Of a DNA stretch of 64,000 nt, positions 14,601-33,774 are shown in pieces. Every line of letters starts with the position of its first letter. Within the stretch, counting starts at the first letter, position 1. The notes below the pieces were generated by a model, which worked only from the letters and a program-made list of their open reading frames with translations, was not told the DNA's origin and did no database searches. The stretch is from Macrostomum lignano (lineage: Eukaryota), in contig NIVC01000672.1 of assembly GCA_002269645.1 (NCBI GenBank), positions 419,029 through 483,028 on the forward strand, written 5' to 3'. The position numbers were made by a program, and so were the translations under genes.

Positions 14601-15385
14601 TTCTGGCCATCAGCTCCTGCACTGCAGAGCTTCTCGCCACTGGCGTTACTGGTAAGAACATCATTTTCCATTCGGACAGCCAAGCTGCCTTGCACGCCAT
14701 CAGTGGCTGCAGCACCAACTCTGCTACAGTCCTTGACTGTATCAAACTCCTCAATGTGTTGGGTTCCGCCAACAAAATTACCCTTAAGTGGGTTCCGGGG
14801 CATGTGGGGATCCGAGGAAATGAGTTGGCTGACACCCTTGCAAAAGTTGGTGCCTCCGGCTCCTCTCTCGGCCCCGAACCTCTTGTCCCGATTCCTGGCT
14901 GTGTCATCGACTCGCGCATCAAAGCGTGGATCAGGACTCAGCACCGCTCGACTTGGGCGAACCGCACGAACTGCAGGCAATCCAGAGGCGCTGTCCCTCA
15001 GCCCTCTCACCAGCTCCGGAAGCTCCTCTTGCGCCTCTCGCGCAGAGACATCCGGGCTGCCACCATGACCCTCTCTGGTCACGGCTGCTTCTCCAGGCAC
15101 CAGTACCTGCAGGGCAACGCCACCAACGCCACCTGTAGTTTCTGCAACTCAGGTGACGAAACCGCTGAGCATTTCGTCAGCATCTGTCCCGCCTTCACGC
15201 GGGCCAGACTCACTTACCTCGGGCCACACACATCTATTACTGAAGCGTGCAAACCCGAAAACTTTAATCAGCTCATGCGCTACCTTCGGGCCACCCGCAG
15301 GGCTGAACTCTCCTTTCCAGAGAGCACCATAGCTGCTGGCGACACTGGGGGACCTCCCTGGGCGGCGCCAACCCTCCGTCCATAG
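11647..15385 (+). CDS. LINE ORF2: AP endonuclease, reverse transcriptase, RNase H and C-terminal CCHC, with two frameshifts (~12020, ~12810)
   Basis: APE: QINLQH, IQEPW, GGDLNAHH, LSDHC. RT: SPGPDGI, FRPISL, LDIVGAFD, PQGGVLTP, YADDV. RNase H: YTDGSK, NEVLAI, SDSQAAL, VPGHVGIRGNELAD. C-terminus: CSFC...ETAEHFVSIC. Confidence 0.95.
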
Positions 15386-15480
15386 CGACGCGTCGGCCGT
15401 TCAGGGACTAGCGGAATGGGCGCCCGCGCCTTCCCGCTGTGTCCCCTCCGGGACAGCCCTGCAGCTAAGTCAAGTAAGTC

Positions 15481-16761: not shown

Positions 16762-16797
16762 CTGTTGAAGTTGTGCTGCTTTGTCTGCAATCCGTTA
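16762..16797 (-). CDS. 36-bp phase-1/1 microexon directly upstream of the gene 1 caspase exon
   Basis: tttgcAG|ta acg gat tgc aga caa agc agc aca act tca aca g|GTGAGA. It is in frame with exon 16638 across the 123-bp intron 16761-16639. Confidence 0.65.
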
Positions 16798-17750
16798 CTG
16801 CAAATCAGATTGTTGAATTGGTTGTTAGAATTGGATAGAGGCCAGGACTGGCTGATAGAGAGTTGGGTTGAAGCGTACGTAGCTCCTCAGTAGGGTCATC
16901 AGTGATGGACTGTATTATGCATCCATGCTGATGAAAAGCCATCATCAAGCTATTCGTCTCCATAGGCAGAGACTAGAGCTAGTAGTAATAACTTTATCAG
17001 TTATTCAAAATATTCCCATGGCTATGGCGGCGTACCAGAAGTACTTTTAACAGAATAGCAACCGCACAAAATTGCTTCTAAATTTGTCCTACATTTATGA
17101 CACAGGAACAGTGTTGTAATAGAATGCACTGCTGCTGACACACATTCACTAAGTAAGCTATGGTTCTACCAGCTAATTACGTAATATAAGCTCTCTATCC
17201 TTCCCTGTGTTCCTGACAAGAGTTTAATACACGAAGAGACAATTATCGTCAGCTAAGCTTAAAGCAGGCTTTGCTCGACTTTTCCTCAACTTCTTGTGAG
17301 CTGAATATAACTTCCGGGGCTCCTGCGCCGGAAGGACCTTCTATGCTCTTTGATGCCGTTGAAAAAATGAATCTGCCTTTAGCGTTCAAAACACAACAGG
17401 CGTTGCTTGGATCGAGACAGCCAAACTGCAATAAGCTTTATTTTTCCCCGGAACAGAACCCTCTCTCCTGCGCAAGCACTGCACTGCTCAAAAATATCTG
17501 TAGGAGAGACCCATGCAGCTCAGCCTTGCAGGTTATGGAAACGCGGGAGAGCGCCACCACTGACTGCTGTTGGACCTCTTCACCTCATTCTCTCTACCAG
17601 GCCCTCTTACTGGACACGCGCCCACCTCACTTCTTAGCACTTAGTCCACACTAACAAGGTTCAAATGTCTACTTCTGTTTTCAATTTCTCTAACACTTTC
17701 ATTTTTATTTATTGAGTACAAGGAGTTGATTAGGTTTAAGGCGTGCATGA

Positions 17751-17753
17751 GAC

Positions 17754-17798
<45 letters not shown>

Positions 17799-17846
17799 GA
17801 GGGAGAGAGAGAGGGAGAGAGGGAGAGAGAGAGAGACAGAGAGAGA
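17751..17846. repeat. (GA)n microsatellite inside the duplicated caspase-upstream unit (paralogous runs at 22487-22538 and 32714-32787)
   Basis: All three runs share the flanks gattaggttt..ggcgtgcatgaga and ctgcaaagcaatata. Confidence 0.95.
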
Positions 17847-18335
17847 CTGCAAAGCAATATATGGTACGCGATGGAGAAATGTACTTTGGCTCCGAGAAGC
17901 AAATTCAGTCTGCAGATCCCAGATTGCCGGCATTTCCAAGCTGAGCTGAGCTTTCTTTCTTTCCATGACCGCAAAATTCACTCGAACAAATACACAGCAA
18001 GCGCCCCACACAAAAAGTACTGAGCTTTCTTAGAACAAACCTTTGTCACCACATTCTTCCGAACCCAAACCGACTTTCTTGTTCCATTCTAGCTTGGTAG
18101 TGACAATGCGCAATGGTAATGCATCACAGTCCCCGATGGCACATTGCAAAACAGAAGACGCTATTTGAGGCTTTAGCTATTCAGTTAGAGTAGGTGAGGC
18201 TGCGTGTGTAAAAAGCATTTAAAGAGCTTCAACTAAATCCAGAGTAAGGTCGACAGACTACTCGTACTTACGATAATGAGTAATACCTGAGAGCTGAATT
18301 CACTGCTACTCGTGAATTCGTGTATTCATGCTCAC

Positions 18336-18410
18336 CTTGGTCCTTTTGTGACGTGACTCCGCTATCTTTAGAATGCGAGCTCTGTGGAATCGATGGCGGA
18401 TCGGTCTCAT
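18336..18410 (-). CDS. 75-bp phase-1/1 microexon (ETDPPSIPQSSHSKDSGVTSQKDQ)
   Basis: ttattttattgcAG acceptor and G|GTGAGC donor. Paralogs at 20219-20293, 23033-23101 and 33314-33388. Confidence 0.6.
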
Positions 18411-18510
18411 CTGCAATAAAATAAGCATCTTCTGCAAGATCGCATGCATCATTTAGAACCATGCAGCATATTGTAGGCCGTGCGCTGCACTCTGCCCTTG
18501 CTCATTATTA

Positions 18511-19991
18511 TCGAGTCTAGCAATCAGTTTAGTTATTATATGATGCAATTCTACCTTTAAAACTCAGCGACTACTAGTGCTGGCATGTTATACTCAAAAT
18601 TGGTTGCATTCAATGGACTTAGCGCTTTATTAACTCACACCTCAAAATGGCTGTGTTACTCCATCTACATTTATAGTCACCCAGCTGCTTTATTTTGCAC
18701 TGTAGGTTTACTCCTGAGATTTAATATGGCTCGCTGGCACAAGTCCGTAGAAACCGAACGACAAATACTGATTAGCAACGACTGATTGATGCCTTTGAAG
18801 CTGGCGACGACTGAAAGGCGCTGGCTAACGTATTAAGCATCAAGAATTCCACTGCGAGATCGATCATCGCTACCTGGGTTCGAGAAGCTCGGACTGCCAA
18901 GCTGAGGTGGTGGAAGAAGGCATGTAAAGATGGACGACGGACGAAATGAAGGACCTATCAATAGTTTCCCAAATCGTCACCAAGAAGCCATTCGTAACTC
19001 TCGTTGAAGTCAAGGAGCTTCTGCAGCAGAGATTGCCTGGAAAGCCGCCTGTGTCTATCTCTACCATCGCCAGAGTGCTGGAAGGACAGCTCATCACCTG
19101 CAAAGTTGCAGGCAAGGATGCCGATGCTCCTCTGGAGAGAAATCGGCCTGACGTTATCGTCGCCCGGCAGGATTTCGCCCGCTTCTTTGTTAATCTAGGG
19201 GCCAATCATCATCTTATCTGCTTAGACGAATGCGGCTACAATCTGCACACAAGGAGAACTATCGGCAGAGCAGCACGAGCTGAGCGACTTCGACACCAAG
19301 TATGAGGGTCGAGAGGTCGAAACGTCGTACTTACATTGGCGATCTCTTCGACGCTTGGGCTCGTGCATCACCGGTTGCGACAAGAAACCGTCACTCGTCA
19401 AAACTTTCAAGGGTTCATCGACGAGCTAGTGCAGATGGCGGTCGCGATGCTACCGAACAACGAAACCTGCACCATCATCTTCGACGGCGCCAGACCGCAT
19501 CTTCGTATTTCTGTCCCACAGTAATTCGCTGGCCAATTCCAGTTGCGCATGTTGCCAGCCTACAGCCCAATGTTAACACTCACCGAGCAGGCTCACAGCT
19601 GCTTCAAAGCTGTCGTTAAGCGGCAGCTTGCCGAACCTGCCGTGGCGCGTCAAATAGCTGGTGTTGAAAATAATCGCCGAAATGAAGGCCTCAGCCTCTG
19701 CGACTGGCGTGCAAGGATTCAAATCCAAGTATAGGCGGAACTGCTTTAGACACCATCACCATTCAGAAGTGTCAAAACTTGTGCGGCCGTCTGCACCGCT
19801 TCATGCCCGACTCGCTGGCGGGCAGGCCGATCGTCAACGGATAATTAATAATTCATTGAACTCTTTCTGATATTGTTGGTGTGATTTTGCATTGTGTTAT
19901 CCAGAAAGTTGAAATTTATGAAAATAAATTAAAAATGATGGAGGTACATGCCTCCGATTTACAGGATTTAAAAACTGATTGCTAGACTCGG
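18511..19991 (+). mobile_element. Decayed Tc1/IS630-superfamily DNA transposon (~1.48 kb), TA target duplication
   Basis: TIR cgagtctagcaatcagttt (18512-18530) versus aaactgattgctagactcg (19972-19990), with TA at 18509-10 and 19992-93. Transposase pieces 18725-~19740: HTH/GG-R region, ICLDECGYN, IIFDGARPH, LPAYSPMLTLTE, with stops and frameshifts. Confidence 0.85.
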
Positions 19992-20218
19992 TAATGATTT
20001 CCACATGGGCCAACAAGATTGCTGCACACGATATTGACTGCAATGTATTGCTACGAAGTGAAGCTAAATTGGTTTAAGTGGACGAGGAGAAATCGATGCG
20101 TGATAGCGATCCAGTTAGAGTCGGTAAGGCTGCGTGTGTAAAAAGCACTTATGATAATGAATAATACCTGACAGCTGAGTTCAGTGCGACTCGTGAACTC
20201 AAAGTGATTCATGCTCAC

Positions 20219-20293
20219 CTTGGCCCTTTCGTGACGTGACTCCGCTATCTTTAGGAGGCGAGCTCTGTGGAATCGATGGCGGATCGGTCTCAC
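20219..20293 (-). CDS. 75-bp phase-1/1 microexon (ETDPPSIPQSSPPKDSGVTSRKGQ)
   Basis: tattgcAG|gt gag acc...ggc caa g|GTGAGC. Confidence 0.6.
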
Positions 20294-20626
20294 CTGCAAT
20301 AAAATAAACATCTTCTGCAAGATCGCATGCATCATTTGGAACCAGAATGTTCGAAACAATAGCTACATGATAAAGATTCAGTTCCTAGATGGCTATACTT
20401 TATAGCATTCGTATAAGTACGTAGGAAAATTAAAAATACCATGACTGCATCATACTATACTCTCCTATTCATAACTATAGTGTTGAGTTTTAGAAAATTC
20501 GGTTTCAGCTGTTGTATATTTTAATTGAGACCAAATTACAGCCGCAGGTGCACCAGCGCTAAATTAACATAATCGATTTTCTTCTGCACAAAACACCATC
20601 GCCCAATCATGCAAGCACATGCTCAC

Positions 20627-20677
20627 CGGTGGCAGTTGAGTCGCCTTGGCTGAGATCCGTTAATATATCAGCATCAA
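20627..20677 (-). CDS. 51-bp phase-1/1 microexon (DADILTDLSQGDSTAT)
   Basis: gatttgcAG|tt gat gct...gcc acc g|GTGAGC. Confidence 0.6.
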
Positions 20678-20829
20678 CTGCAAATCAGATTGTTGAATTG
20701 GTTAGAATTGGATAGAGGCCAGGACTGGCTAATAGAGAGATGGGTTGAAGCGCACGGAGCCCCTCGGCATACTGTATGTCTCCATGCTGATGACAGCTGC
20801 TAATGAAGCCATCATCAAGCCCCTCGGCA

Positions 20830-21384
20830 TACTGTAATTGTTGTAAAAATTGTCGATTTCTGGGATTTTTTCTTTCAGACGATTCCTCGAAAACGTAAAC
20901 CCGGTTTCGCCGGGAATATAGTAGAATTTTACCGTTTTAGAGCTTTTATTAAAATCTCCAACTGCGTCTTTCAAATTTTCGTTTTTAATTAACATGTCTG
21001 CGATCTCTTTCAGCTCACTTCCATCTGTGTCTTCTTCGTCTTTTTTACATAGGAAATTCACTTTTGTTAATTTTTGTTGATTTTTTTCGTCACGCAGCTT
21101 CTCTCTAAGCTTCTTGCTTCCACAAACAATCAGAAGTCTTTCCGACTGATTATTTCCGTAACTATCGAATGCCTCGAGTAGAATATTTAGTTTATCATCG
21201 AGTTCACTACTGCTACGATGCACTACGAGAACTGCTTGCTTCAATGATTCCTCAGCTGACTTCTCAGCAAGCAGATTCGTAAATTCATCAATGTTATTAC
21301 ATTCTTTCAACTGAAAATCGCAGTCCTTCAGATACTTTTTGAAGCCTGTATTCGATGTGATATTAAAAAAGAATGCTTTCCTGT
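20830..21384 (-). pseudogene. Truncated third copy of the multi-caspase exon (N-module only)
   Basis: Close paralog of 16638-16090 (RKAFFFN...KQAVLVVH...ERLLIVCGSKKLREKLRDEK...FSRNRLKEKIPEI) with the same acceptor (21386-21385). It breaks off at ~20835 into the upstream repeat unit. Confidence 0.8.
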
Positions 21385-21505
21385 CTGAAATGCAGTTCAA
21401 AAATATTTGCGATAGCAAGTGAGGGCTGGGGCTAAATATCGGAGCAGTAACGCATCCGGTTCTGCACAAAACACCATCGCCCCAATCATGCAAGCACATT
21501 CTCAC

Positions 21506-21559
21506 CTGTGACTGCTGAAGTTGAGTCGCCTTGTTTGGGGTCCGTTAAACGAGATCCAA
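21506..21559 (-). CDS. 54-bp phase-1/1 microexon (GSRLTDPKQGDSTSAVT)
   Basis: aatttgcAG|tt gga tct...gtc aca g|GTGAGA, in frame with exon 21384. Confidence 0.6.
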
Positions 21560-22494
21560 CTGCAAATTGGATTGTTGAATTGGTTAGAATTGGATAGAAT
21601 TGGATGGAGGCCAGGACTGGCTAATAGAGAGATGGGTTGAAGCGTACGTAGCTCCTCAGTAGGGTCATCAGTGATACACTGTATTATGCCTCCATGCTGA
21701 TGAAAAGCCATCATCAAGCTATTCGTCTCCAAAGGCAGACTAGAGTTAGTAGTAATAACTTATCAGTTATTCAACATATTTCCATGGCTATGGCGGCGTA
21801 CCAAAAGTAATTTTTACAGAATAGCAACCGCACAAAATTGCTTCTAAATTTGTCCTACATTTATGACACAGGAACAGTGTTGTAATAGAATGCACTGCTG
21901 CTGACACACATTCACAAGAGTGGGCTATGGTTCTACCAGCTAATTACGTAATATAAGCTCTCTATCCTTCCCTGTGTTCCTGACAAGAGTTCAATACACG
22001 AAGAGCCAATTATCGTCAGCTAAGCTTAAAGCAGATTTTGCTAGACTTTTGCTCAACTTCTTGTGAGCTGAATATAACTTCCGGGGCTCCTGCGCCGGAA
22101 GGACCTTCTATGCTCTTTGATGCCGTTGAAAAAATGAATCTGCGTTGCTTGAATGAAAACAGTCAAACTGCCATAAGCTTTATTTTTCTCCGGAACAGAA
22201 CCCTCTCTCCTGCGCAAGCACTGCACTGCTCAAAAATATCTGTAGGAGAGACCCATGCAGCTCAGCCTTGCAGGTTATGGAAACGCGGGAGAGCGCCACC
22301 ACTGACTGCTGTTGGACCTCTTCACCCACTTCTCTCTACCAGGCCCCTGTTACTGGACACGCGCTCACGTCACTTAGCAGCACTTCTCAACTGACGAGGT
22401 TCAAATGTCTACTTCTGTTTTCAACTTCTCGAACACTTGAATTTTATTTATTGAGTACAAGGAGTAGATTAGGTTTAAGGCGTGCATGAGAGAA

Positions 22495-22541
<47 letters not shown>

Positions 22542-23032
22542 CAAAGCAATATATGGTACGCGATGGAGAAATGTACTTTTAATTATTTTGGCTCCGAGAA
22601 GCAAATGCAGTCTGCAGATGCCCAGATTGCTGGCATTGCCAGGAAAAAATGCCAAGTAATGCGGCTGTCAGCGCGCCTGGCCGTCAAGAAAGATACACAG
22701 CAGGCGCCCACACAAATAATACTGAGCTTTCCTAAAAACAGCTTTGTCGCCACATTCTTCCGAACCAAATCCGAGTGTCTTGTTTCATTCTAACTTGGCA
22801 ATGATAATGCGCAATGGTATTGCATCACAGTCACTGATGGCATATTACAAAACAGAAGACTCTATTTGAGGCTTTAGCTATTTAGTTAGAGTAGGTGAGG
22901 CTGCGTGTATAAAAAGCATTTAAAGAGCTTCAACTAAATCCAGAGTAAGGTCGACAGACTACCTATGATAATGAATAATACCTGACAACCGAGTTCAATG
23001 CTACTCGTAAACTCAAATTAATTCATACTTAC

Positions 23033-23101
23033 CCTGTTGCTCCTTTTGTGGAGAGCTATCTTTAGGAATCGAGCTCTGTGGATACGATTCCACATTTTCA
23101 C
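23033..23101 (-). CDS. 69-bp phase-1/1 microexon (ENVESYPQSSIPKDSSPQKEQQ)
   Basis: tattgcAG acceptor and G|GTAAGT donor. Diverged paralog of the 75-bp exon with a net 6-nt loss. Confidence 0.6.
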
Positions 23102-23496
23102 CTGCAATAAAATAAACATCTTCATGATTTCATGCATCATTTGAAACCAGAATTTGTTATTCGAAACAATCGATGCATGATTAAGGATTCAGTTCGTCTG
23201 TCATCGCCTCTTAGTTTACCTCCTCTATTCTATTTATGATTAACCTAGATGGTTATACTTTATTGATATGTTACATAGGTAAATAAAAAAAAACATAGCA
23301 TAGATATATTGTGCATCATATATTCTCCTATCCATAACTGTGGTGTTGAGTTTCATAAAATTCGGATTGAGCTGTTATACATGTATATTTCAATCGAGAC
23401 CAAATTACAATCGCCGGTAGACCAGCGCTAAATTAGCATAATTTATTTTCTTCTGCACAAAAAACCATCGCGCAAATCATGCGAGCACATTCTCAC

Positions 23497-23553
23497 CTGT
23501 GGCCACTGGAGCTGAGAAGATTTGGTTGCGGTTGCGATCCGCTAAAGCACCAA
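23497..23553 (-). CDS. 57-bp phase-1/1 microexon (GALADRNRNQIFSAPVAT)
   Basis: gattttcAG|tt ggt gct...gcc aca g|GTGAGA. Confidence 0.55.
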
Positions 23554-25047
23554 CTGAAAATCAGATTGTTGAATTCGTTTATAAATGATGTGATGTGAAA
23601 CATTTATGATACAAGAACAGTGTTGTAATAGAATGCACCGTTGCAGACATTTACTGAACTATGGCTATGGTTCTACCAGCTAACTACATAATAAAAGCTC
23701 TCTATCCTGCGTATTGCGTGTTCCTGACAAGAGTTCAATACACGTATAACAAAATATCGTCAGCTAATCTTAAAGCAGGCTTTGCTCGGCTTTTGCTTAC
23801 CTTCTTGTGTGTCTCCTGTGCTACTTGATGCCATGGAAAGGTTTAATTTAGCGTTCAAGACACAACAGGCGTTGCTGGGATCAATGCAGCCAAGCTTCAA
23901 TAAGCTTTATTTTGCTCCGGAACAGAACCCTTGCTCCTGTGCAACCACCGCAGTGCTCAAAAGTATCTGGAGGAAAGCCTTTTAATCTGAGAGGCAGGCG
24001 CGGGAACGCGGCTGAATCATCACCCACTTCTCTATAACAGGCCCTCCGAATGGACACGCCTTCTGGTAATAAAACCGTGCAGGGTTGCGGAATGAGGATA
24101 GTGTACCGGGGGGCAATGCGCCAATGAGCCAATTATGATACCGTTTTATTTGTTTCTTTATTGTTTTTTATGTTTTCTTTCTTTATGTTTATTTATTTCA
24201 ATAGTGAAGCCGCCTAATTGCCTGATTATTTTGCCTAAGGGCCTAATTATTAACTATTGCTAAACTCCTCATTATTCACACTTTCACCATCATTTAATTC
24301 ATGGCTTGCTAAGCCTTTCTCCCGGGGTGGCAAAGCATAAGGAAGTTTGGGTAAGCTAATGGCCTCTCCCCGTGCAAAGCCCGCCTGTGTGTGCGTGCTG
24401 CGGGTCCGAGTGTGCGTGCAGTAGAGGAGATTAGCGAGTCTTGGCACAGAATGGCAGTAGGAAGGTTGCAACCCCATGCTGTTGCGTCCCTTCGCCCTGA
24501 GCAATCTAAACTATAGCTAGTACATGTTCGTCTCCACTACTCTTAGTAATTAAAGCCGCAAGTCAGCCTCGCTCACAGCCACAAAGGATCCCCTGTTGAG
24601 AAATCCTCCAGATTGAGCCCAGAGTTCCCGATCATGCCACAAGCAGAGTCCCTGTACTCGGCTGCATGTGTCTCCCCTGTTAGCCTAAATCCCCTGGTAA
24701 CCAATTCAGGCGGGGCTCTAGCCTCGAGAGGTCTGGAAGTAAGATCTAGGTGCGCCAGGTCACATAGAGTGGTGACAGCCACTCGGTCATGCTATGACCG
24801 AGTGACCAACTATTGCACCTTGGCTACAGGTGGGGTCCATGTGGGTCCTTGGGCTCTGGTCACGAAAGCGCTACCAAAGCTATCAATCATGTGGGCGGGA
24901 CAGTCTGGTGCTGGAGGTCCGTCAGGTCATTTCCTGGTCATAGGCAGCCTACGGTTATTGCCCCCCCCCCTCTGGTCATGCGTTCGTCTCTCAACGGAGC
25001 GGACGGGCGACAAGGGCGGTAACATCATAATCGTTTTTTTTAATTAA

Positions 25048-25049
<2 letters not shown>

Positions 25050-25080
<31 letters not shown>

Positions 25081-25152
25081 TAGCCCTAAGACAGACAGAC
25101 AGACAGACAGACAGATAGCCCTAAGACAGACAGACAGACAGACAGACAGACA
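25050..25152. repeat. (GACA)n microsatellite with TAGCCCTAA interruptions
   Basis: Directly visible. The same variant occurs at 48410-48490. Confidence 0.9.
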
Positions 25153-25806
25153 GCAGCCAGCGATTGCGAGTACATCTGCACTGAAACCCTCTGGCCGCCA
25201 AGCTGAGGGTGGGTGTACTTGGACAGGCCAAACCTGTCATACTCGGAGGGGGTTGGCATTCAATCGTGCCACCTTTTGGTGCACCTCCCCATGTGATGGC
25301 GTGCTTATTTATACCCGACACATAAAGCAAATAAACTTTCACTTTTCTCGCTTGCAACCTACTTCGTTCTTCGCGAGCCGCTAAAATATAGTGTTTAGAA
25401 AAATTGTAAAATTTTCGTACCTGAGTAATTTTACATCTTTGAAACACTTTCAATTAGTGTTTTTGTTCCAAAACATCATTTTTGAATGATTATCATGATT
25501 ATCATTCTTTGACCCGGACTTTACAGTCCGGATATCGCAAAGCAAACCTTAGTTTTTCGGCCGGATATTTCAACCTGCTTAGTGATTTCCGGGTAGGGGG
25601 GGGAGACTGCAAGTACCCCGGAGAACATAAAGCAGCTTGAGATATCCGGACCGGATACTTTAAGATGCTTGAAATATCCGGGGGCGGATCAGAAAGCACT
25701 TGCAATGTCCTGGGGGAGATCAAAAAGTACTTGTACTATCTGGGCGGATAACACAAGACACGGATTTCCGAAAGTATAGCACCGGGCTGAACTGGACACC
25801 CAGTAG

Positions 25807-26757
25807 TAGTTTCCACCTGCCCTATAATCTGTAGTTTCCACCGGCCCTATAATCTGTAGTTTCCACCTGCCCTATAATCTGCAGTTTCCATCTGCCCTAT
25901 AATCTGCAGTTTCCACCTGCCCTATAATCTGCAGTTTCCACCTGCCCTAAAATCTGCAGTTTCCACCTGCCCAATAATCTGTAGTTTACACCTGCCCTAT
26001 AATCTGTAGTTTCCACCTGCCCTATAATCTGTAGTTTCCACCTGCCCTATAATCTGTAGTTTCCACCTGCCCTATAATCTGTAGTTTACACCTGCCCTAT
26101 AATCTTTAGTTTCCACCTGCCCTATAATCTGTAGTTTAAACCTGCCCTATAATCTGTAGTTTACACCTGCCCTATAATCTGTAGTTTCCACCTGCCCTAT
26201 AATCTGTAGTTTCCATCTGCCCTATAATCTGTAGTTTCCACCTGCCCTATAATCTGTAGTTTCCATCTGCCCTATAATCTGTAGTTTCCACCTGCCCTAT
26301 AATCTGTAGTTTCCACCTGCCCTATAATCTGTTTCCACCTGCCCTATAATCTGTAGTTTACACCTGCCCTATAATCTGTAGTTTCCACCTGCCCTATAAT
26401 CTGTAGTTTCCATCTGCCCTATAATCTGTAGTTTCCACCTGCCCTATAATCTGTAGTTTCCACCTGGCCTATAATCTGTAGTTTACACCTGCCCTATAAT
26501 CTGTTTCCACCTGCCCTATAATCTGTAGTTTAAACCTGCCCTATAATCTGTAGTTTCCACCTGCCCTATAATCTGCAGTTTCCACCTGCCCTATAATCTG
26601 CAGTTTCCATCTGCCCTATAATCTGCAGTTTCCACCTGCCCTATAATCTGCAGTTTCCATCTGCCCTATAATCTGCAGTTTCCATCTGCCCTATAATCTG
26701 TAGTTTCCACCTGCCCTATAATCTGCAGTTTCCATCTGCCCTATAATCTGCAGTTTT
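25807..26757. repeat. 25-bp minisatellite (gtagtttccacctgccctataatct), about 38 copies
   Basis: Directly visible. Confidence 0.97.
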
Positions 26758-26828
26758 CGTCTGCCCTCGCCTGCAGTTATCTCCATCTATCTTGAATTTC
26801 TTTGCCGGCGACCAGAATTGTCTTGTCA

Positions 26829-27093
26829 TTATTGATTATGATTATGATTTTGATGATGGCGATGATGGTGATGGTGATAATGGTGATGGTGATTGTGATG
26901 ATGATGATGGCGATGGTGATGATGGTGTTGGTGATGGTGATGATGATGATGGCGATGATGGTGATGGTGATGGTGATGATGATGATGGTGATGGTGATGA
27001 TGTTGATGATGGTGATGGCGATGATGGTGATGGCGATGGCGATGATGATGATGTTGATGAAGGCGATGATAATAATGGTGATGATAGTGATGA
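26829..27093. repeat. Imperfect (GAT/GGT/GGC)n trinucleotide repeat
   Basis: Directly visible. Confidence 0.93.
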
Positions 27094-28744
27094 TATACTT
27101 TCTCAGAAATAAAAAGAACGCAATGAAGCAGCAGATTCTGTGGAATAAATAATGATTTAACAACAATCGGTTCTACACACGAACTTATGATAAAAAGTAT
27201 TATATAACAAAAAAACTGATTTATAGATTTTTATTATTGAAATTAGTTTTCTTTGATTATAGATAATCATAAATAGAAAGCAGAATAGCAAAGACTCAAA
27301 CCAGCACCCGTGCAGTAAAGTACATATTTGAAATGAGTAGCTACCAGCGTATTTTGAATCAAAAGACAAAATAAAGTAGCTCCGACACCTTATTAGGTTT
27401 CTTCACGATTCTTTAATAAAATTGAACTTTGAATCCCTTGAAAAAAATTGTCAGAATCAAAAAATTGGTGGGGATCACGCGGTGCTTAATTCCCTGCTAC
27501 CTGCTTAGAGACGATTCCTTGAGCACAGCACAGATGTTAACTCTGCCGAATAGAAACTGCTCAAGGAAGTGGCGTGCACGGGTGTTCCAGCCCAGGACTG
27601 AAGCACCAGGGGAGAATGGCATTAGTAAAAAAGTGTATTAATGGCAGAGGAAAATTATTAACTTCAATTTTCAGCCTATAAAATAGCTAAATGTAACCAA
27701 CAAGCAAAAACTACAATTGCAAAGTTATAAGAAGCAAAATCAGACACAAAAGGTGCTCAATGGGGGGTTTAAAGCCAAGAAAGTCTCACACAGACACGCG
27801 ACACATGCTAGCTAAATATAATGTAAGGTAATGCGATATAATATATAATAAATAACATAATAACAATAATAAATTATAACTGCAATATAATGCAGAACAG
27901 GTGACAATAATAAATAATTAATTTATGTAAGAGCCGCCATTATCTTAGAGAGAACTCATTTTTCAAATTTGAAAACATTGAACTATTTGATAGAAACACT
28001 GTTTCATAAAAATCTGCTTATAAATACCATTTTTACTGGAGAATCAATCAATTGCTCAGCCTTTAATAAACTTTGTACTCTTTCCCCGCCCTGTTAAAGT
28101 GTTAACGTTCATGCTTTACGTAGAAGAATGAGTTGATAAGATTTATTTAAAATGATATTTGGCAATGACGTCTGCTAGTCAACTGATTTTTGTTTGTGTG
28201 CAATTGCGTGATAGTATGGCAATGCGAAAATGAAACCTGCACAACTATACTCATGTTTAATATACATATGCTGGGGCTAATTGATTGGGGAACCAACTGA
28301 AATGATAAACTATGTTTTCTATGTTTTTAATTATCTGATATAAAGATTCCAATCGATTTTTATTTCATTTTCACAGAGTATACTTAGTGATAGCAATAAC
28401 TGATGAATTAGCAATCGAAAAAGCAAGTCTTGTAAGCTGAGCATTTGATTTGATCTCCAGAGTAAGATTAAGCATTGAATGAGAGCGTAAACAAATCATG
28501 CAAATATTTTTGAGTCAAGATTACGCCACGCTCGCTCACACCACTATCAAATTGCGGCACTGGAAAAATCTGAAAAGCCGCGTGATTAACATTATTAAGC
28601 TTGGCCTGGTTTTAAGATATGGTGTGAATGAGCATCAACACTATAAGCAAAGGGTAAAGGACATGCTTTGTCAGTCAGTTGTAGCTATTATTAGTTTTAT
28701 TTGCTTTTAAATTGTTCTGGCCTTGCCTCAGGCTCCTCAGTCCA

Positions 28745-30129
28745 TCAGGCAACTGAATTGTCTTCATTGTCGGCATTGTTGTCCGCATTGTTGTCCGCAT
28801 TGTTGTCCGCATTGTTGTCCGCATTGTTGTCCGCATTGTTGTCCGCATTGTTGTCCGCATTAACCAACCAGAACTTCTCTGTTGTTGTGGCTGTCCAACA
28901 CGGCAGCTGCCACTGGTGGCTATCTGTAGCAAGATGACTAGGCTCATCAGGATAATTAGGCTTTTCATAATAGTGCATCATGCGATAGTTGACGAATTTG
29001 CTGATCTCAATAACATCCAGTTGATTATTCGGCATGTCACGAACATAATCAGCAAAGGCCTGGCAGAGGGTGAGAACAAACCTGCTACCACAACCGTCCT
29101 TTCGACTACTATAGTCTCCAGGAGCGGTGGAGTAAGCAACTATCGTGTTAGCCGGTATTTTACAGACGACATTTCCTTCAGCACCGTGGTGTCTGCAGGA
29201 TTGAATGACTACAAGCTTCTGCTCTTTAATGTTGTTTAGGGATTCAAACAGATCGTTTTCCTCAACGCTTTTGTCATCAACTCCCGTAATTTTTCCGAGC
29301 TCTCCGTGTGACATAAAAACGATAACAGAGGTTTTGCTGTGATCTTCAAGTTTGGAAAACTCCTCAACCACTGTTCGCAAAGCTTCGGAGCTCAAATTGT
29401 GCCAGATGGAAATTCGGTAGTAAAACTGCTGGAAAAGATGACGCAGAACTGCAGTATCGTACAGACTGGCCAGTCTGTCATCCTCACATTTAGGGAATAT
29501 AGCGTTGCTGACTATCAGGAGGCGTGGGCGCTTCCCCTCTGGTTTTGAAATAGTGCTTTTCCCTTCAAAGGATTCTTTTACTTCTTCGTCGTGTCCAACA
29601 TTCGAAAAAACCAAAGCTTCATCTGTATTAAATGTTTCTTCGCGTCGTCGCGGAAGCGGTATCACAGGGAATTCTTCTCCACCCTGGAGTTGTTCTGCTT
29701 GCTGTCTGATTTTAACTTTATCCAGCCACTTCTGAATACATTCAGCGATTACTTTTGCACTGTTACGAACGCTAGCGTGAAACATTTTGTCACTGATTTT
29801 CGTTACTTGCTGTTCATTCTGCGATCCGATTTCGCATGAAAAAACAACAATTTTCTTAGCATTGCTTGCTTCTTCTTCAAGTTTATTCTTGAATTGCTGC
29901 AGGTCGCGATACGTAGTGTAGACAAGGAGAGCCAGAACGAACTTCGCATTACATGTGACTGCACTGGGGGTGCAGAATAGCTCAAACTTTTCTGTTATCT
30001 CAACTTCCTCTGCCCTTACCTGGTAGCCGCTGGCAGCGAGAAGTTTTTCGAAATCTTGAGCTTTCTTTAAAATTTCCCCATGGTTTTGTTGGATGCCGCT
30101 GTCCAACAGTATCAGCGCCTGGTGGGAAC
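28745..30129 (-). CDS. Multi-caspase gene 2, terminal exon: degenerate module plus a catalytically intact caspase domain with an (ADNN)n tail
   Basis: Acceptor tctttttAG (30131-30130), phase 1, in frame with ORF 28745..30106. Motifs RLLIVSN...DRLASLYD...VFMSHG...KLVVIQSCR...IVAYST...GSRFVLTLC...VN...QLPCW..TTEKFWL. A 12-bp repeat lies at 28769-28860. Confidence 0.9.
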
Positions 30130-30206
30130 CTAAAAAGACAATTTGACACGTAAATTATTGTGCAAGAAATTTATAACTTCGCCATGAAAACAAAATTTTA
30201 TTTTAC

Positions 30207-30236
30207 CTGGTTGAAAATCGTTTGGTCTAGGCTTAT
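30207..30236 (-). CDS. 30-bp phase-1/1 linker microexon of multi-caspase gene 2 (D-KPRPNDFQP-G)
   Basis: aaatttcAG|at aag cct aga cca aac gat ttt caa cca g|GTAAAA. Introns 30563-30237 and 30206-30130 are both GT-AG and keep the frame. Confidence 0.75.
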
Positions 30237-30563
30237 CTGAAATTTAGAAGTTTCATAAAGTGACTCGGGGAATTCACATGTATTTTTTAACTTATTGAAA
30301 TTTTTTAAACTCGAATTTCAAATTGTCAAGCTCAACCATCGCGTTCCAGAAAACAATACCCAATAGGAGACCCCATCATCCAGTATTGTTTCAAGCACTC
30401 AAGAGTTATTATCTGAACTGTATGAACTGTACAAGCAGTCGAAAGGAATTTCATCATATGAGCGTAACGCTACGCTTGCAGGATACGAGAATACGCTCGT
30501 ATTCTCATTTTTACAGAAGCGTTTGGTAACTTCTGAAAGCCTAATTGGAACAATTCTACCAAC

Positions 30564-32018
30564 CTTTTTTTTCTTGCGAAGAATTTCCTTTTCCATTCGA
30601 CTTTTCGTGCGACGGCTGCTCCGCGTCTGTCTTGCACAAGAAGAAGTTTCTGTGCGTTAGCCACGTCCATCGTGGCTTCTCATCGAAACCATCCATTGAG
30701 GGGCGGCGAAATGATTTGTTGACTTCATTGATTAGTGAAACCACGTCCTTACTATCGGCATGCTTGTAATATGCAGTACAGATGCTTTTGACCAGTTCGC
30801 TGCCAGTTTTATCGCAAAGAGGCTCAGTATACCTGCACGTGACCAGGCCAGCTTGGCTGTGATGTGATTCATCTGTATTCATGGATATTCTAAGATACTG
30901 CGCCAGCTCCCGGCAATTATATGGGATATTCGTCCGTCTAGCGTCGGCCTTTTCATTTGTGCCTCCAGTGGATTTTTGCTCACCATCTTTTATTCGTAAG
31001 TTGAATATCACGAGCTTTGGAGCTGACCGATTGCCAATGTTTTTTAAAGCACCGATAATTTCGGTTTCAGTTACTGTTGAGCCGTCCGAGCACTCAATTT
31101 TACCGTCTTTTTCAAAAGCAGTGATGACGAGAATCCACAGGTTGTGATGCTCCTTAAACTCTTCAGCCGTACGAATCAGCTCGCTCGCCTTCAGGTTGTT
31201 AAATTGCACTACACCAAACAGCATGTTCTCAAACAAGTAGCACAGTCGGTCACTGTCTATCTTTGAACCTTCGAGTGCGTCAGCGCCACTGGTGGTCACG
31301 CAATTGACAACAAGAGCAGTTGGTTCGCCATGGCGCTCATAGTAACCCATTTTATCTTCGTTTATTGTTGCGTCTGGCTTCATCTGCTGCAAATCCTGAG
31401 TTCTGAGCAGTTCTGAGTCCTTTTCAAGATCATCTCTACTTTTCTCATCAAATCGGCAAGGCTGTCGAAAGCGCACGAATTCGGGTGTGCCGTATTTGAG
31501 ATCAACAATCCCTTTTTCCTTGATGGAAGTTTTGAATGATTCTTTACGAATAATTGACCCGATGCAATTCGTCTGCCAATGCAGAGTTTGATGTTCCTGC
31601 AAGGACTTGAAAAAATCTTCGATCCGATCAGCCGCTGCAACTTTATACAAGCAGAAAATGTTTTTGTAACTTTCTTGGTAGAAGCTCTCAGAAAAGTCAA
31701 CCGAAGGATCGAACGACCGGTTGCTGTCAACCTTGCAGTAGACGAGCAGGCAGCGCTGCGTTTTGGAGTCTTTAATGGCTTCGAGAGTATTCTGTAAGCT
31801 CAGCGAATTGCCGATTTCCTCATCATTCACGACAACAACAACTGAAAATCTTGTGCCCGAAAGACGCTCGATCAGCTGGTTTAGCTGGAGCTGACTGGAA
31901 TCCGGATTCGAGGAAAAGCCGCAGCTTTTAATGAATTCAAAATATTCATTTCCGGCTTTTGCTTCACGAGATTCCGAAGACAAGTTGCTGCTGAATACCG
32001 CAACGCAGCGTTGTTCAA
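30564..32018 (-). CDS. Multi-caspase gene 2, exon encoding a degenerate N-module and a catalytically dead pseudo-caspase
   Basis: Acceptor ttttgcatttcAG (32020-32019). Motifs PTALVVN...EGSKIDSDRLCYLFE...WILVITAFE (no His-Gly)...PKLVIFNLR (no Cys)...GSELVKSIC...DVVSLINEVN...PRW..LTHRNFFL. Donor AG|GTTGGT at 30564|30563. Confidence 0.87.
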
Positions 32019-32711
32019 CTGAAATGCAAAACAGGTGAAGCTGCGGTAAAGCGTAAGCAGTACGCACGGTGTCACAAACTCATTGATACGCTTGTAACTA
32101 ATTTCTACCTGCTATCTTACTAATTTCGGTGTACATCCTGAACTTCTAATCAGAAAGAAGGTTCAGTTTGTTCGGCGCGATGCTACCCAACAATGTCCAA
32201 TTTCCCGAAGCAAAAATTTCCAATTATGTTTTTTATCTCGCGCTTGCAATTCCATTCTCGCAGGTACATCACTGCAGCGCTATAGGTTAAGATGGGTAAT
32301 ACGTTGTTCCTTCACTATTTATTGTTGGTTGCTTGCCATGAGCTAATGAAAAAATTAATAATTTACATTTCACAGGTTGGAAAATATTGATTATCTCCTT
32401 TCTGCTCAAAAAAGGCTCGTCCACACCGCTATCAACGAGTAAAAAATGTGTGTGATTACATGACTGATGTACTCTACATAGATCAATGTACAATGCACAC
32501 TGATTTACCCGTTTGATGGCAGTGCGGACTGGCCTGGCCTCATGAATATGCTCTCGACACAAAGTCTGGGAAGTTAAGCCTCGATTGAATTTGGATAAAA
32601 ATATCCCTATTGTGGCGGCCTGCGGTCTGCGATTGGTGCAGCGCTCGTGCACCGGCACTCTCAGCTACCCCCAGCCGTACACATAGAGGCCAGATTAGGT
32701 TTGAGGCGTGC

Positions 32712-32791
<80 letters not shown>

Positions 32792-33313
32792 GAGCAACTG
32801 CAAAGCAATATACGGTAGCGATGACGAAATATCTTAGGCTCTGAGAAGCCAATGCAGTCTGCGGATCCCCAGATTGCTGGCATGCCAGGAAAAATGCCAA
32901 GCAATGCGGCCGTCAGCGCGTTTGGCCGTCAAGAAAGCTGAGCTTTCTTTCCATGGCCATAAAATTCACGCGAACAATACACAGCAGACGCCCACACAAA
33001 TACGGAGCTTTCTTAGAAAAAGCTTTTTCGCCACATTCTTCCGAACCAAAACCGAGTTTCTTGTCCCATTCTAACTAGCCAATGACAATGCGCAATGGTA
33101 ATGCATCACAGTCCCTGATGGCACATTGCAAAACAGAAGACGCTATTTGAGGCTTTAGCTATTCAGTGAGAGTCGGTGAGGCTGCGTGTGTAAAAAGCAT
33201 TTAAAGAGCTTCAACTAAATCCAGAGTAAGGTCGACAGACTACTTGTGATAATGAATAATACCTGACAGCTGAGTTCACTGCTACTCATTAAGTCAAAGT
33301 AATTCATGCTCAC

Positions 33314-33388
33314 CTTGGTCCTTTTGTGGAGTGACTCCGCTATCTTTAGGAGGCGAGCTCTGTGGAATCGATGGCGGATCGGTCTCAC
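33314..33388 (-). CDS. 75-bp phase-1/1 microexon upstream of gene 2
   Basis: tattgcAG|gt gag acc gat ccg cca...gac caa g|GTGAGC. Confidence 0.6.
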
Positions 33389-33723
33389 CTGCAATAAAAT
33401 AAGCATCTTCTGCAAGATCGCATGCATCATTTGGAACCAGAATGTTCGAAACAATAGCTACATGATAAAGATTCAGTTCCTAGATGGTTATACTTTATAG
33501 TACTCGTACATGTACATAGGAAAATTAAAAAAATACCATGACTGCATCATACTATACTCTCCTATTCATAACTATAGTGTTGAGTTTCAGAAAATTCAGT
33601 TTCAGCTGCTTTATACTTCGATCGCGACCAAACTACAGCCGCAGGTGCACCAGCGCTAAATTAGCATAATCGATTTTCTTCTGCACAAAACACCATCGCC
33701 CAATCATGCAAGCACATGCTCAC

Positions 33724-33774
33724 CTGTGGCCGTTGAGTCGCCTTGGCTGAGATCCGTTAATATATCAGCATCAA
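33724..33774 (-). CDS. 51-bp phase-1/1 microexon upstream of gene 2
   Basis: gatttgcAG|tt gat gct gat ata...gcc aca g|GTGAGC. Confidence 0.6.

What the first reader, a model, noticed from the sequence alone, without database searches (positions are those of the whole stretch)
16762..33774. Array of nine frame-preserving phase-1 microexons upstream of the caspase exons
Seen: two microexon families hidden in apparently non-coding duplicated DNA. Family A is 36, 51, 54, 57 and 51 bp (16762, 20627, 21506, 23497, 33724). Family B is 75, 75, 69 and 75 bp (18336, 20219, 23033, 33314). Every length is a multiple of 3, all are phase 1/1, stop-free and bounded by YAG and GTGAG/GTAAG, while the flanks carry arbitrary indels. 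They encode Ser/Thr/Pro/Asp-rich peptides. The large caspase exons are also phase 1/1. Inference: a modular, possibly alternatively spliced N-terminal leader of tunable length, with Asp motifs (ETD, DAD, QGD) as candidate cleavage sites. Symmetric exons would also ease domain shuffling. I could not locate the true first exons.
Basis: partly seen in the sequence, partly recalled or inferred. Interest (0 to 1): 0.72.

Follow-up and report, generated by a model that had tools for sequence, protein, structure and literature searches.

The report
Small leader exons of flatworm caspase genes
The nine short segments are real coding mini-exons that encode the floppy N-terminal tail of two neighbouring caspase-like genes of the flatworm Macrostomum lignano, and there are nine only because one of the genes has been rearranged and hit by mobile elements; this is an ordinary, though tidy, gene structure.

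Summary
All nine segments lie on the minus strand. Each has a TTGCAG or TTTCAG acceptor and a GTGAG or GTAAG donor, a length divisible by 3, and an open phase-1/1 frame.

They are exons, not chance. A 96%-identical contig of M. lignano (NIVC01001342.1) carries a GenBank CDS, PAA69179.1. That annotation set was built only from RNA-seq transcript assemblies. The CDS is spliced as ATG-exon(19) | A(51) | B(75) | 1455-nt exon, at boundaries homologous to A5 and B4. A paralogue only 23% identical (PAA75222.1) has the same plan: 46 | 39 | 57 | 1353 | 126 | 1433 nt, with every intron in phase 1.

The "array of nine" is not one array.
- A5 and B4 belong to gene II. I located its first exon at 34058-34076. 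The spliced ORF is intact at 1004 aa.
- The other seven belong to gene I, whose first exon is at 23801-23834.
- In gene I the normal A-B-A leader occurs twice. A junction joins a truncated module-1 exon copy (E1') to intron 1. B is duplicated around a DDE transposon.
- Gene I is also cut by a 5.9-kb LINE inside its coding exon.

Leader exon number differs between gene copies. Alternative splicing and Asp cleavage remain untested. Interest is low to moderate.

The parts
34058..34076 (-). Gene II first coding exon: ATGGCTGCACCACAAACCG|gtgagc (MAAPQT + 1 nt, ends in phase 1)
   Evidence: Homologous to exon 1 of PAA69179.1 (P0003) on L001 10001-10019.
33724..33774 (-). A5, 51-nt phase 1/1 mini-exon of gene II (DADILTDLSQGDSTAT)
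   Evidence: Homologous to the 51-nt exon L001 11445-11495, which the RNA-seq-derived CDS P0003 uses.
33314..33388 (-). B4, 75-nt phase 1/1 mini-exon of gene II (ETDPPSIPQSSPPKDSGVTPQKDQ)
   Evidence: It is 75/75 identical to L001 11829-11903, which P0003 uses.
30564..32018 (-). E4, 1455-nt phase 1/1 exon: N-domain plus pseudo-caspase (module 1 of gene II)
   Evidence: Pfam Peptidase_C14, E=3.7e-7. The catalytic His and Cys are replaced. Matches P0003 exon 4.
30207..30236 (-). 30-nt phase 1/1 linker mini-exon of gene II (DKPRPNDFQP)
   Evidence: Homologous to the 33-nt exon L001 16758-16790 in P0003.
28745..30129 (-). E3, last exon of gene II: N-domain plus catalytically complete caspase (module 2)
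   Evidence: Pfam Peptidase_C14, E=1.7e-28. SHG and QSCR are present. The six exons together give an intact 1004-aa ORF.
23801..23834 (-). Gene I first coding exon: ATG..GAAG|gtaagc (MASSSTGDTQE + 1 nt, phase 1)
   Evidence: Matches the N-terminus MASNSMAGTSEE of P0002 and exon L002 24646-24682.
23497..23553 (-). A4, 57-nt phase 1/1 mini-exon (distal A type)
   Evidence: Resembles the A exon used in model P0002 (..IISAPVAT).
23033..23101 (-). B3, 69-nt phase 1/1 mini-exon
   Evidence: Two 3-nt deletions relative to the other B copies. A B-type exon is used in model P0002.
21506..21559 (-). A3, 54-nt phase 1/1 mini-exon (proximal A position, about 120 nt upstream of E1')
   Evidence: No transcript or annotation support found for proximal-A exons.
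20843..21384 (-). E1', truncated copy of the 5' part of the module-1 exon. It lacks its native 3' end. An in-phase GTGAGC lies at 21018, which would give a 366-nt 1/1 exon.
   Evidence: 87% identical to 16100-16638. Read-through meets a stop 38 codons past the junction. Junction to the upstream flank of A2 at about 20820-20843.
20627..20677 (-). A2, 51-nt phase 1/1 mini-exon (distal A type, 49/51 identical to A5)
20219..20293 (-). B2, 75-nt phase 1/1 mini-exon
18504..19998 (+). DNA transposon between B2 and B1, with 27-nt terminal inverted repeats and a DDE_3 transposase ORF broken by stops
   Evidence: Inverted repeat 18504-18530 / 19972-19998. Pfam DDE_3, E=1.1e-10.
18336..18410 (-). B1, 75-nt phase 1/1 mini-exon. 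The duplicated block is 18266-18461 and 20147-20344.
16762..16797 (-). A1, 36-nt phase 1/1 mini-exon (proximal A, 123 nt upstream of E1)
   Evidence: 34/36 identical to L001 26683-26718. Also present at L002 9451-9486 and 27088-27123.
15481..16638 (-). E1, 5' part of the gene I module-1 exon (N-domain plus pseudo-caspase). It runs into a stop (NGFSTA*) created by the LINE.
9585..15480 (+). LINE (endonuclease, reverse transcriptase, RNase H) inserted antisense into the E1 coding exon. It is flanked by the 14-bp target-site duplication CTTTTCAACGGCTT.
   Evidence: Pfam. The duplication copies lie at 9571-9584 and 15481-15494, with 5896 bp between them. The empty-site exon is open and 1257 nt long.
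9472..9584 (-). E1, 3' part after the LINE (..YQNFEEQSKKDIKVPLPYWIVQTTDKFFLDEDN|gtaaat)
7582..9056 (-). E2, last exon of gene I (linker fused to N-domain plus active-type caspase, module 2)
   Evidence: Pfam Peptidase_C14, E=4.2e-32. THG and QVCR are present and the ORF is open. The short intron present in L001 and L002 is absent here.
17285..17308 (-). Decayed copy of the first exon upstream of A1 (ATG changed to ATA, donor GT changed to TT). A twin copy lies at 22052-22075 upstream of A3.
   Evidence: Alignment of the repeated upstream regions; coordinates.

Best explanation
The segments are ordinary cis-spliced coding mini-exons on the minus strand. They belong to two adjacent members of a gene family found only in Macrostomum lignano. 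Each gene encodes two modules: a pseudo-caspase followed by an active-type caspase.

The family's exon plan is:
1. a short ATG exon ending in phase 1;
2. two or three symmetric phase-1 exons of 36-81 nt;
3. a module-1 exon of about 1.3-1.5 kb;
4. a linker exon of 30-126 nt;
5. the module-2 exon.

The mini-exons encode a low-complexity, acidic, Ser/Thr/Pro-rich N-terminal extension that is probably disordered.

Because every intron is in phase 1, gain, loss or skipping of any internal exon keeps the frame. The intron segments flanking the A and B exons are themselves repeated, so unequal recombination and gene conversion can change exon number. Different copies therefore carry A-B, A-A or A-B-A.

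In this window:
- Gene II has the plain form (exon 1, A5, B4) and an intact 1004-aa ORF.
- Gene I carries seven mini-exons for two reasons. A junction between mid-E1 and intron 1 puts one A-B-A set and a truncated exon (E1') in front of a second set. This junction is either a partial tandem duplication or a deletion that fused two tandem paralogues. Separately, B is duplicated on either side of a DDE transposon.
- Gene I is also broken by a LINE in its module-1 exon.

Shown: the sequence features, the homology to transcript-derived CDSs, the conserved architecture, the rearrangements and the insertions. Inferred: that this window's own copies are transcribed and spliced in the same way, that the leader is disordered, and which of the seven gene I exons reach mRNA.
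For: - Splice motifs, phase and openness of all nine. They match the species' dominant cis-splice motifs GT[G/A]AG and CAG (PMC8629364).
- PAA69179.1 (P0003) begins MAAPQTV-DADILTGVSQGDSTAT-G-ETDPPSIPQSSPPKDSGVTPQKDQ-V-EQRCVAV.
- Splicing L001 10001-10019 + 11445-11495 + 11829-11903 + 14975 onward reproduces P0003 exactly for 533 aa.
- The GenBank annotation of that assembly derives only from RNA-seq and transcript assemblies (PMC5730564).
- L001 is syntenic with the window at 94-97% identity across gene II.
- The window's six gene II exons give an intact 1004-aa ORF.
- Distant paralogue PAA75222.1 has exons 46|39|57|1353|126|1433, all in phase 1. PAA82799.1 has 85|1658 with a phase-1 intron.
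- L002 copy b shows exon 1-A(54)-B(81)-A(36)-E1-30-E2. L001 and L002 copy a show exon 1-A(54)-A(36)-E1.
- All 18 exon copies have 3n lengths, against 34% 3n among flank gaps.
- The first-exon copies next to A1 and A3 have lost both the ATG and the donor, while A1 and A3 keep their sites and frame.
- Rearrangement map; transposon; LINE with target-site duplication.
- Leader residues 1-51 of P0003 have pLDDT about 30 and no secondary structure, but the model is poor overall.
Against: - No RNA data could be mapped to this window. The transcript evidence comes from a 96%-identical copy, and multi-mapping reads were allowed in that annotation.
- The proximal-A exons (A1, A3) are absent from every protein model retrieved.
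- The exons are no better conserved than the introns, and in some pairs less so (A1-A3: 0.78 against 0.91). pN/pS is about 1. Sequence conservation therefore gives no support for the seven gene I exons.
- Gene I is disrupted by the E1' fragment and the LINE stop, so its leader exons may no longer matter.
Confidence: 0.8

Rival explanations
1. One reading: the nine exons form one modular cassette array that is alternatively spliced to give caspase leaders of tunable length, with Asp motifs as processing sites.
For: - All exons are symmetric in phase 1, so any subset is in frame. Joining all seven gene I exons gives an open 150-aa leader.
- Exon number differs among copies.
- The 30-nt linker exon is present in PAA60871.1 but skipped in the UniProt models P0001 and P0002.
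- Asp in L-x-D (A) and PKD[S/C] (B) recurs in most variants.
Against: - The nine belong to two genes, separated by two large exons and satellites.
- A truncated exon fragment and a transposon sit inside the gene I set.
- No isoform pair differing in A or B usage was found.
- The linker difference lies between two annotation pipelines, not between demonstrated isoforms.
- ETD is ENV or EID in two B variants. The A Asp is Gly in the expressed allele. Pro follows ETD; caspases disfavour Pro at P1' (general knowledge, not tested here).
Confidence: 0.1
2. Only A5 and B4 are in use. The seven gene I copies are relics in a decaying allele and are not spliced into any stable mRNA.
For: - A LINE with an intact 14-bp target-site duplication puts a stop in E1.
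- E1' has no native donor and reads into a stop.
- There is a transposon between B2 and B1.
- Exon divergence equals or exceeds intron divergence, and pN/pS is about 1.
Against: - All seven keep their acceptor, donor, 3n length and open frame. The neighbouring first-exon copies decayed.
- The insertions look recent: the target-site duplication is identical and the LINE ORFs are long. The exons were therefore probably in use until recently.
- The module-2 exon E2 is still open.
Confidence: 0.3
3. The large exons receive the spliced leader (SL) by trans-splicing, so the upstream mini-exons are bypassed.
For: [quoted passage not shown]
- PAA60871.1 starts at an internal Met of E1.
Against: - P0003 and P0011 carry cis first exons and mini-exons in front of the large exon.
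- The SL ends in ATG. Fused to the A, E1 or E4 acceptors, that frame meets a stop within 1-46 codons, because these acceptors need one extra nucleotide.
Confidence: 0.1
4. Chance ORF-like segments in duplicated non-coding DNA.
For: With a bare AG acceptor, such candidates are common. The copies are paralogous, so shared features are partly inherited.
Against: - Exact use of the homologous segments in a transcript-derived CDS.
- The same architecture in a paralogue only 23% identical.
- All length changes are 3n.
Confidence: 0.02

Closest known systems
Schistosome micro-exon genes (MEGs)
   Same: Both occur in a flatworm. Both have runs of short symmetric exons with 3n lengths, so inclusion or skipping keeps the frame. 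Both are lineage-restricted, fast evolving (pN/pS about 1 here) and spread by duplication.
   Different: - In MEGs nearly the whole CDS is made of 10-20 micro-exons, many about 15 nt long, behind a signal peptide, and the products are secreted.
- Here 2-3 exons of 36-81 nt encode only about 5-15% of a 1000-aa caspase-like protein.
- The N-terminus is not hydrophobic.
- Alternative splicing is not shown.
Short N-terminal pro-peptides of effector caspases (caspase-3/-7 type)
   Same: A short, non-globular N-terminal peptide precedes a caspase-fold domain, and it is rich in Asp.
   Different: The leader here precedes an uncharacterised alpha/beta N-domain and a pseudo-caspase, not the catalytic domain. 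Cleavage is untested. This comparison rests on general knowledge only.
Symmetric phase 1-1 exons and exon duplication or shuffling in metazoan genes
   Same: All introns of the family are in phase 1. Exon copy number varies through duplication of exon-plus-intron blocks.
   Different: The classic cases involve folded extracellular modules. Here the duplicated units are short low-complexity peptides. No transfer of A or B exons to unrelated genes was found.
Pseudo-caspase partners such as cFLIP or insect decoy caspases
   Same: Module 1 has a caspase fold signature but lacks both catalytic His and Cys.
   Different: Here the pseudo-caspase and the active caspase are fused in one polypeptide, each behind its own N-domain. 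Function is unknown. The comparison is from general knowledge.

Membership tests
Schistosome-type micro-exon gene (MEG) | Internal exons are symmetric, with lengths that are multiples of 3 | tested here: met
   All nine are phase 1/1 and 3n, as are nine further copies in L001 and L002.
Schistosome-type micro-exon gene (MEG) | Most of the coding sequence is built from many (10-20) micro-exons | tested here: not met
   Gene II has 156 nt of mini-exons out of a 3015-nt CDS. MEG definition taken.
Schistosome-type micro-exon gene (MEG) | N-terminal signal peptide and a secreted product | tested here: not met
   The N-termini MAAPQTVDADILTD.. and MASSSTGDTQE.. have no hydrophobic stretch. The leader is 14-15% hydrophobic residues. 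No dedicated signal-peptide predictor was run.
Schistosome-type micro-exon gene (MEG) | Protein variants produced by alternative splicing of the micro-exons | not testable with these tools
   No RNA reads were available. The only hint is that the 30-nt linker exon is present in PAA60871.1 and absent in P0001 and P0002, which come from different pipelines.
Caspase (Peptidase C14) | Pfam Peptidase_C14 domain above the gathering threshold | tested here: met
   E3 scores 100.3 bits, E4 30.5 bits and E2 112.1 bits. E1 has no hit at E<=0.1 but aligns to E4 and to the others.
Caspase (Peptidase C14) | Catalytic His (SHG) and Cys (QxCRx) dyad | tested here: met
   Met in the module-2 exons: E3 has MSHG and IQSCR, E2 has MTHG and FQVCR. 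Not met in the module-1 exons: E4 has TAFE and FNLRI, E1 has LAEE and VHLRK. Module 1 is therefore a pseudo-caspase.
Cis-spliced internal coding exon of M. lignano | Species-typical splice motifs (acceptor CAG, donor GT[G/A]AG) | tested here: met
   motifs from PMC8629364.
Cis-spliced internal coding exon of M. lignano | Present in a transcript | tested here: inconclusive
   Shown for the homologues of A5 and B4 in the RNA-derived CDS PAA69179.1 at a 96%-identical locus. Not shown for this window's own copies. Not shown at all for the proximal-A type (A1, A3).
Neural-type microexons (27-30 nt or less) | Length of about 30 nt or less | tested here: not met
   The nine are 36-75 nt. Only the linker exon 30207-30236 is 30 nt. 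The length threshold is from general knowledge.

The most novel reading that the evidence does not exclude
The leader is a MEG-like diversity device in a free-living flatworm. In this reading, symmetric mini-exons on an intracellular tandem pseudo-caspase/caspase are multiplied, exchanged by gene conversion and alternatively spliced under diversifying selection. Hints: several exon pairs show only non-synonymous changes (for example 10:0 and 7:0), and some exons are more diverged than their introns. This would tune a processing or recognition tail, perhaps in an immune or reproductive arms race.
Probability: 0.1. Interest if true: 0.6.

Novelty: new member of a known kind. Interest (0 to 1): 0.3.

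Why it matters
The result shows that a sequence-only reader can pick out real 36-75-nt coding exons from apparently non-coding duplicated DNA.

It also documents a lineage-specific family of two-module caspase-like genes whose introns are all in phase 1. In such genes, exon gain and loss costs nothing in reading frame. That makes the family a clean small example of how exon number drifts through segmental duplication, gene conversion and mobile-element insertion in a recently duplicated genome.

Practically, it supplies the missing first exons and a corrected gene model for this locus. It also flags that one of the two genes is broken in this haplotype.

It does not by itself reveal a new mechanism.

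Tried and rejected
- **Prokaryote-style ORF listing** served only to find the large exons.
- **Second word-indexed protein search** with the full gene II protein found only P0003. No other protein family carries A- or B-like peptides, so there is no sign of shuffling to other genes.
- The tools would not accept spliced proteins for the exhaustive search or the contig look-up. I used P0003 instead. It found only eight relatives. The close ones are all M. lignano, and the rest are generic caspases from amphioxus and a bryozoan.
- **P0002** is not on record in the contig index.
- **Conservation test.** I expected exons to be better conserved than introns. They are not, and pN/pS is about 1 in the leader and 0.7-1.3 in module 1. 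I therefore dropped the purifying-selection argument and relied on frame, splice-site and architecture conservation.
- **MAFFT gap runs inside the A exons** are not individually 3n, because acceptors shift between copies. Only net exon lengths are used.
- **AlphaFold model of P0003** was too poor (pLDDT 46.9) to identify the N-domain, so I ran no fold search.
- **Pfam** gives only sub-threshold Glycos_transf_1-like hits for the N-domain.
- **Literature.** No paper mentions these gene ids, and no held supplement of PMC5816591 lists them. No paper links Macrostomum with micro-exon genes in this sense.
- **Off-by-one errors** of my own, at the E1' and E2 acceptors and in the empty-site length, were corrected.

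Full report
**1. The observation**

The window is eukaryotic and the genes of interest lie on the minus strand. Read that way, each of the nine segments is preceded by ..TTGCAG or ..TTTCAG and followed by GTGAG or GTAAG. Each has a length divisible by 3. Each is open in the frame that borrows one nucleotide from the preceding exon, i.e. phase 1 at both ends.

A window-wide scan for 36-75-nt segments bounded by TT[GT]CAG and GT[AG]AG finds one on the plus strand, and its length is not 3n. It finds eleven on the minus strand. These motifs are the dominant cis-splice motifs of Macrostomum lignano (PMC8629364). The nine fall into two families of paralogous copies, so they are not independent events.

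**2. Organism and genes**

The large minus-strand ORFs are caspase-like. Pfam Peptidase_C14 hits 28745-30106 at E=1.7e-28 and 30556-32067 at E=3.7e-7, and 7642-9057 at E=4.2e-32.

A protein search with the conceptual splice A2+B2+B1+A1+E1 returned three M. lignano proteins. The window is syntenic with contig NIVC01001342.1 of assembly Mlig_3_7 (locus L001). Identity is 94-97% over gene II and 84-88% over gene I. L001 lacks a 10.4-kb LTR retrotransposon that the window has at 35314-45720.

Each gene has two modules. Module 1 (E4, E1) is an unassigned alpha/beta N-domain plus a caspase-like domain in which both catalytic residues are replaced (TAFE/FNLRI and LAEE/VHLRK). Module 2 (E3, E2) keeps SHG/QSCR and THG/QVCR.

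An exhaustive HMMER search of 1.8 billion representatives found only eight relatives. The close ones are all from M. lignano.

**3. Transcript-derived support**

GenBank protein PAA69179.1 (P0003) starts MAAPQTV|DADILTGVSQGDSTAT|G|ETDPPSIPQSSPPKDSGVTPQKDQ|V|EQRCVAV... Splicing L001 10001-10019 + 11445-11495 + 11829-11903 + 14975 onward reproduces it exactly for 533 residues. Its full exon map is 19|51|75|1455|33|110|93 nt, with all leader junctions in phase 1.

The GenBank annotation of this assembly was made only from RNA-seq, de novo transcripts and TransDecoder, not from ab initio prediction (PMC5730564).

The homologous window segments are A5 and B4; B4 is 75/75 identical. A further 30-nt phase 1/1 linker exon lies at 30207-30236. 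The six exons join into an intact 1004-aa ORF.

**4. The architecture is a family trait**

- PAA75222.1 (P0011), only about 23% identical, is spliced 46|39|57|1353|126|1433 nt with every intron in phase 1.
- PAA82799.1 (P0006) is 85|1658 nt with a phase-1 intron.
- Contig NIVC01002099.1 (L002) holds two gene-I-type copies. Copy b has exon 1 (MASNSMAGTSEE), A(54), B(81), proximal A(36), E1, a 30-nt linker and E2. Copy a and L001 gene I have exon 1 (MAET), A(54), proximal A(36) and E1, without B.

So two mini-exons are ancestral. The third, the proximal A, comes from a duplication of the exon 1-plus-A block. Directly upstream of A1 and A3 lie copies of the first exon that have lost both the ATG (now ATA) and the donor (now TT). 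The adjacent A copies keep their sites and frame.

**5. Why there are nine**

Self-comparison gives this order on the minus strand:

- gene II: exon 1, A5, B4, E4, 30-nt linker, E3;
- satellites;
- gene I: exon 1 (23801-23834), A4, B3, A3, E1' (21384-20843), junction, A2, B2, transposon, B1, A1, E1.

Details of the gene I rearrangement:

- E1' is an 87%-identical copy of the first 540 nt of E1. It ends where the upstream flank of A2 begins, at about 20820-20843. It has no native donor and reads into a stop. An in-phase GTGAGC at 21018 could make it a 366-nt symmetric exon.
- The junction is either a partial tandem duplication (intron 1 to mid-E1) or a deletion that fused two tandem paralogues of the kind seen in L002. 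I cannot tell which.
- B1 and B2 are a 199-bp duplication (91% identical). They flank a 1.5-kb element with 27-nt inverted repeats and a DDE_3 transposase ORF broken by stops.
- A LINE (endonuclease, reverse transcriptase, RNase H) sits antisense inside the E1 coding exon. It lies between two copies of the 14-bp target-site duplication CTTTTCAACGGCTT, 5896 bp apart, and creates ..NGFSTA*.
- With the two flanks joined, E1 is an open 1257-nt phase 1/1 exon.

Gene I is therefore broken in this haplotype, although E2 is still open.

**6. Evolutionary pattern**

Across 18 A and B copies the lengths are 36, 51, 54, 57, 69, 75 and 81 nt, all 3n. That requires at least five length changes. In the flanks only 10 of 29 distinct gap runs are 3n. 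Under a flank-like indel spectrum, five 3n changes would have a probability of about 0.005 (my arithmetic).

The exon sequences are not better conserved than the introns, and in some pairs they are worse: A1-A3 0.78 against 0.91, and A2-LA_I 0.67 against 0.84. Part of this reflects mosaicism. The exon of LA_I resembles A4, while its flanks resemble A5.

pN/pS is about 1 or higher in the leader exons, with several pairs showing only non-synonymous changes. It is 0.7-1.3 in E1 and E4. The whole first module is fast evolving, yet it keeps ORFs of about 1.3 kb open.

**7. How it most likely works**

The mini-exons encode a short, acidic, Ser/Thr/Pro-rich N-terminal extension. About 76% of residues are polar or small. 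In a poor AlphaFold model, residues 1-51 have pLDDT about 30 and no secondary structure.

Uniform phase-1 introns make exon gain, loss or skipping frame-neutral. The repeated intron blocks provide substrates for unequal recombination and gene conversion.

SL trans-splicing directly onto these acceptors is unlikely to be productive. The M. lignano SL ends in ATG, and in that frame the A, E1 and E4 acceptors reach a stop within 1-46 codons. The cis first exons supply ATG plus the extra nucleotide.

Regulated alternative splicing and Asp-directed cleavage remain conjecture. PKD[S/C] in B is present in every variant compared, and L-x-D in A recurs in most. However, the A Asp is Gly in the expressed L001 allele, and ETD is ENV or EID in two B variants.

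**8. Comparison with known systems**

Schistosome MEGs share the symmetric short exons, flatworm host, lineage restriction and fast evolution. They are defined by a CDS made almost wholly of micro-exons behind a signal peptide. Both features fail here, so this is not a MEG.

The structure is best described as an ordinary multi-exon 5' coding region with symmetric phase-1 exons, in a lineage-specific tandem pseudo-caspase/caspase family. No paper retrieved describes this family or links Macrostomum to micro-exon genes.

**9. Verdict**

- Observation: confirmed.
- Interpretation: partly supported. The exons and the leader are real, and exon number varies between copies. They do not form one array of nine, and splicing regulation is not shown.
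- Novelty: a new member of a known kind. The homologous exons are already in GenBank at another copy.
- Interest: 0.3.

Noticed in passing
window 9585-15480 (+), target-site duplication copies at 9571-9584 and 15481-15494: A LINE with long ORFs (endonuclease, reverse transcriptase, RNase H) is inserted antisense into the coding exon E1 of gene I. It has a perfect 14-bp target-site duplication and creates a premature stop. L001 and L002 lack it.
   Followed up: yes
window 35314-45720: A 10.4-kb LTR retrotransposon (gag zinc knuckle, RT, RNase H) lies about 1.2 kb upstream of the gene II first exon. It is absent from the syntenic contig L001, so it is a polymorphic or copy-specific insertion close to the likely promoter.
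   Followed up: partly
window 18504-19998: A DDE_3 (Tc1/mariner-like) DNA transposon with 27-nt inverted repeats and a transposase ORF broken by stops. It sits between two 199-bp duplicate blocks, each carrying a B exon. A simple cut-and-paste insertion would not explain a 199-bp duplication.
   Followed up: partly
window 9056-9020 compared with L001 28558-28658 and L002 28906-29007: In L001 and L002 the 30-nt linker exon is separated from E2 by an intron of about 72 nt. In the window the linker is fused in frame to E2 (..SSETKRHSALIL..). This is an intron presence/absence difference between copies.
   Followed up: partly
window 30564-32018 and 15481-16638: Module 1 of both genes is a pseudo-caspase: the catalytic His and Cys are both replaced. 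It sits behind an N-domain of about 150-200 aa with a beta-alpha-beta pattern and no Pfam family. Module 2 repeats the N-domain plus an intact caspase. Close relatives were found only in M. lignano.
   Followed up: partly
E1/E4 and the leader exons; window compared with L001 and L002: pN/pS is 0.7-1.3 over module-1 exons of about 1.1-1.5 kb that nevertheless stay open. Several leader exon pairs differ only by non-synonymous changes (10:0, 7:0, 7:0). This may reflect diversifying selection, but the samples are too small and partly non-independent.
   Followed up: partly
window 17285-17308 and 22052-22075: Decayed copies of the first coding exon (ATG changed to ATA, donor GT changed to TT) lie upstream of the proximal A exons. 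This shows that the third leader exon arose by duplication of the exon 1-plus-A block.
   Followed up: yes
window 30014-30028 and 27508-27600: The GenBank model PAA69179.1 leaves E3 at an internal GTAAGG donor (after ..ASGYQ) and ends in a distant 93-nt exon. This isoform lacks the active caspase domain. In the window the full E3 ORF continues through that site.
   Followed up: no
B exons: 18336-18410, 20219-20293, 23033-23101, 33314-33388: All four B exons are open in a second frame as well (for example VRPIRHRFHRARLLKIAESLHKRTK). This is probably incidental.
   Followed up: no
window 25806-26767, 26851-27092, 28767-28861: Three repeat arrays: a 25-bp satellite (38.7 copies, 93% matches); a TGATGG-type array between the two genes; and a 12-bp repeat that encodes the (NADN)n tail at the C-terminus of gene II.
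   Followed up: no
window about 45700-55400 (-), including 51430-51468: A DNA polymerase theta-like gene (helicase plus pol A domains in the L001 annotation) lies upstream on the same strand. One of its segments (39 nt) also fits the phase 1/1 mini-exon pattern.
   Followed up: no
L002 10001-30290: The GenBank model PAA60871.1 joins E1 of one tandem copy to the linker and E2 of the next copy 18 kb away, and it starts at an internal Met. This is either a chimeric transcript assembly or read-through splicing between tandem paralogues.
   Followed up: no
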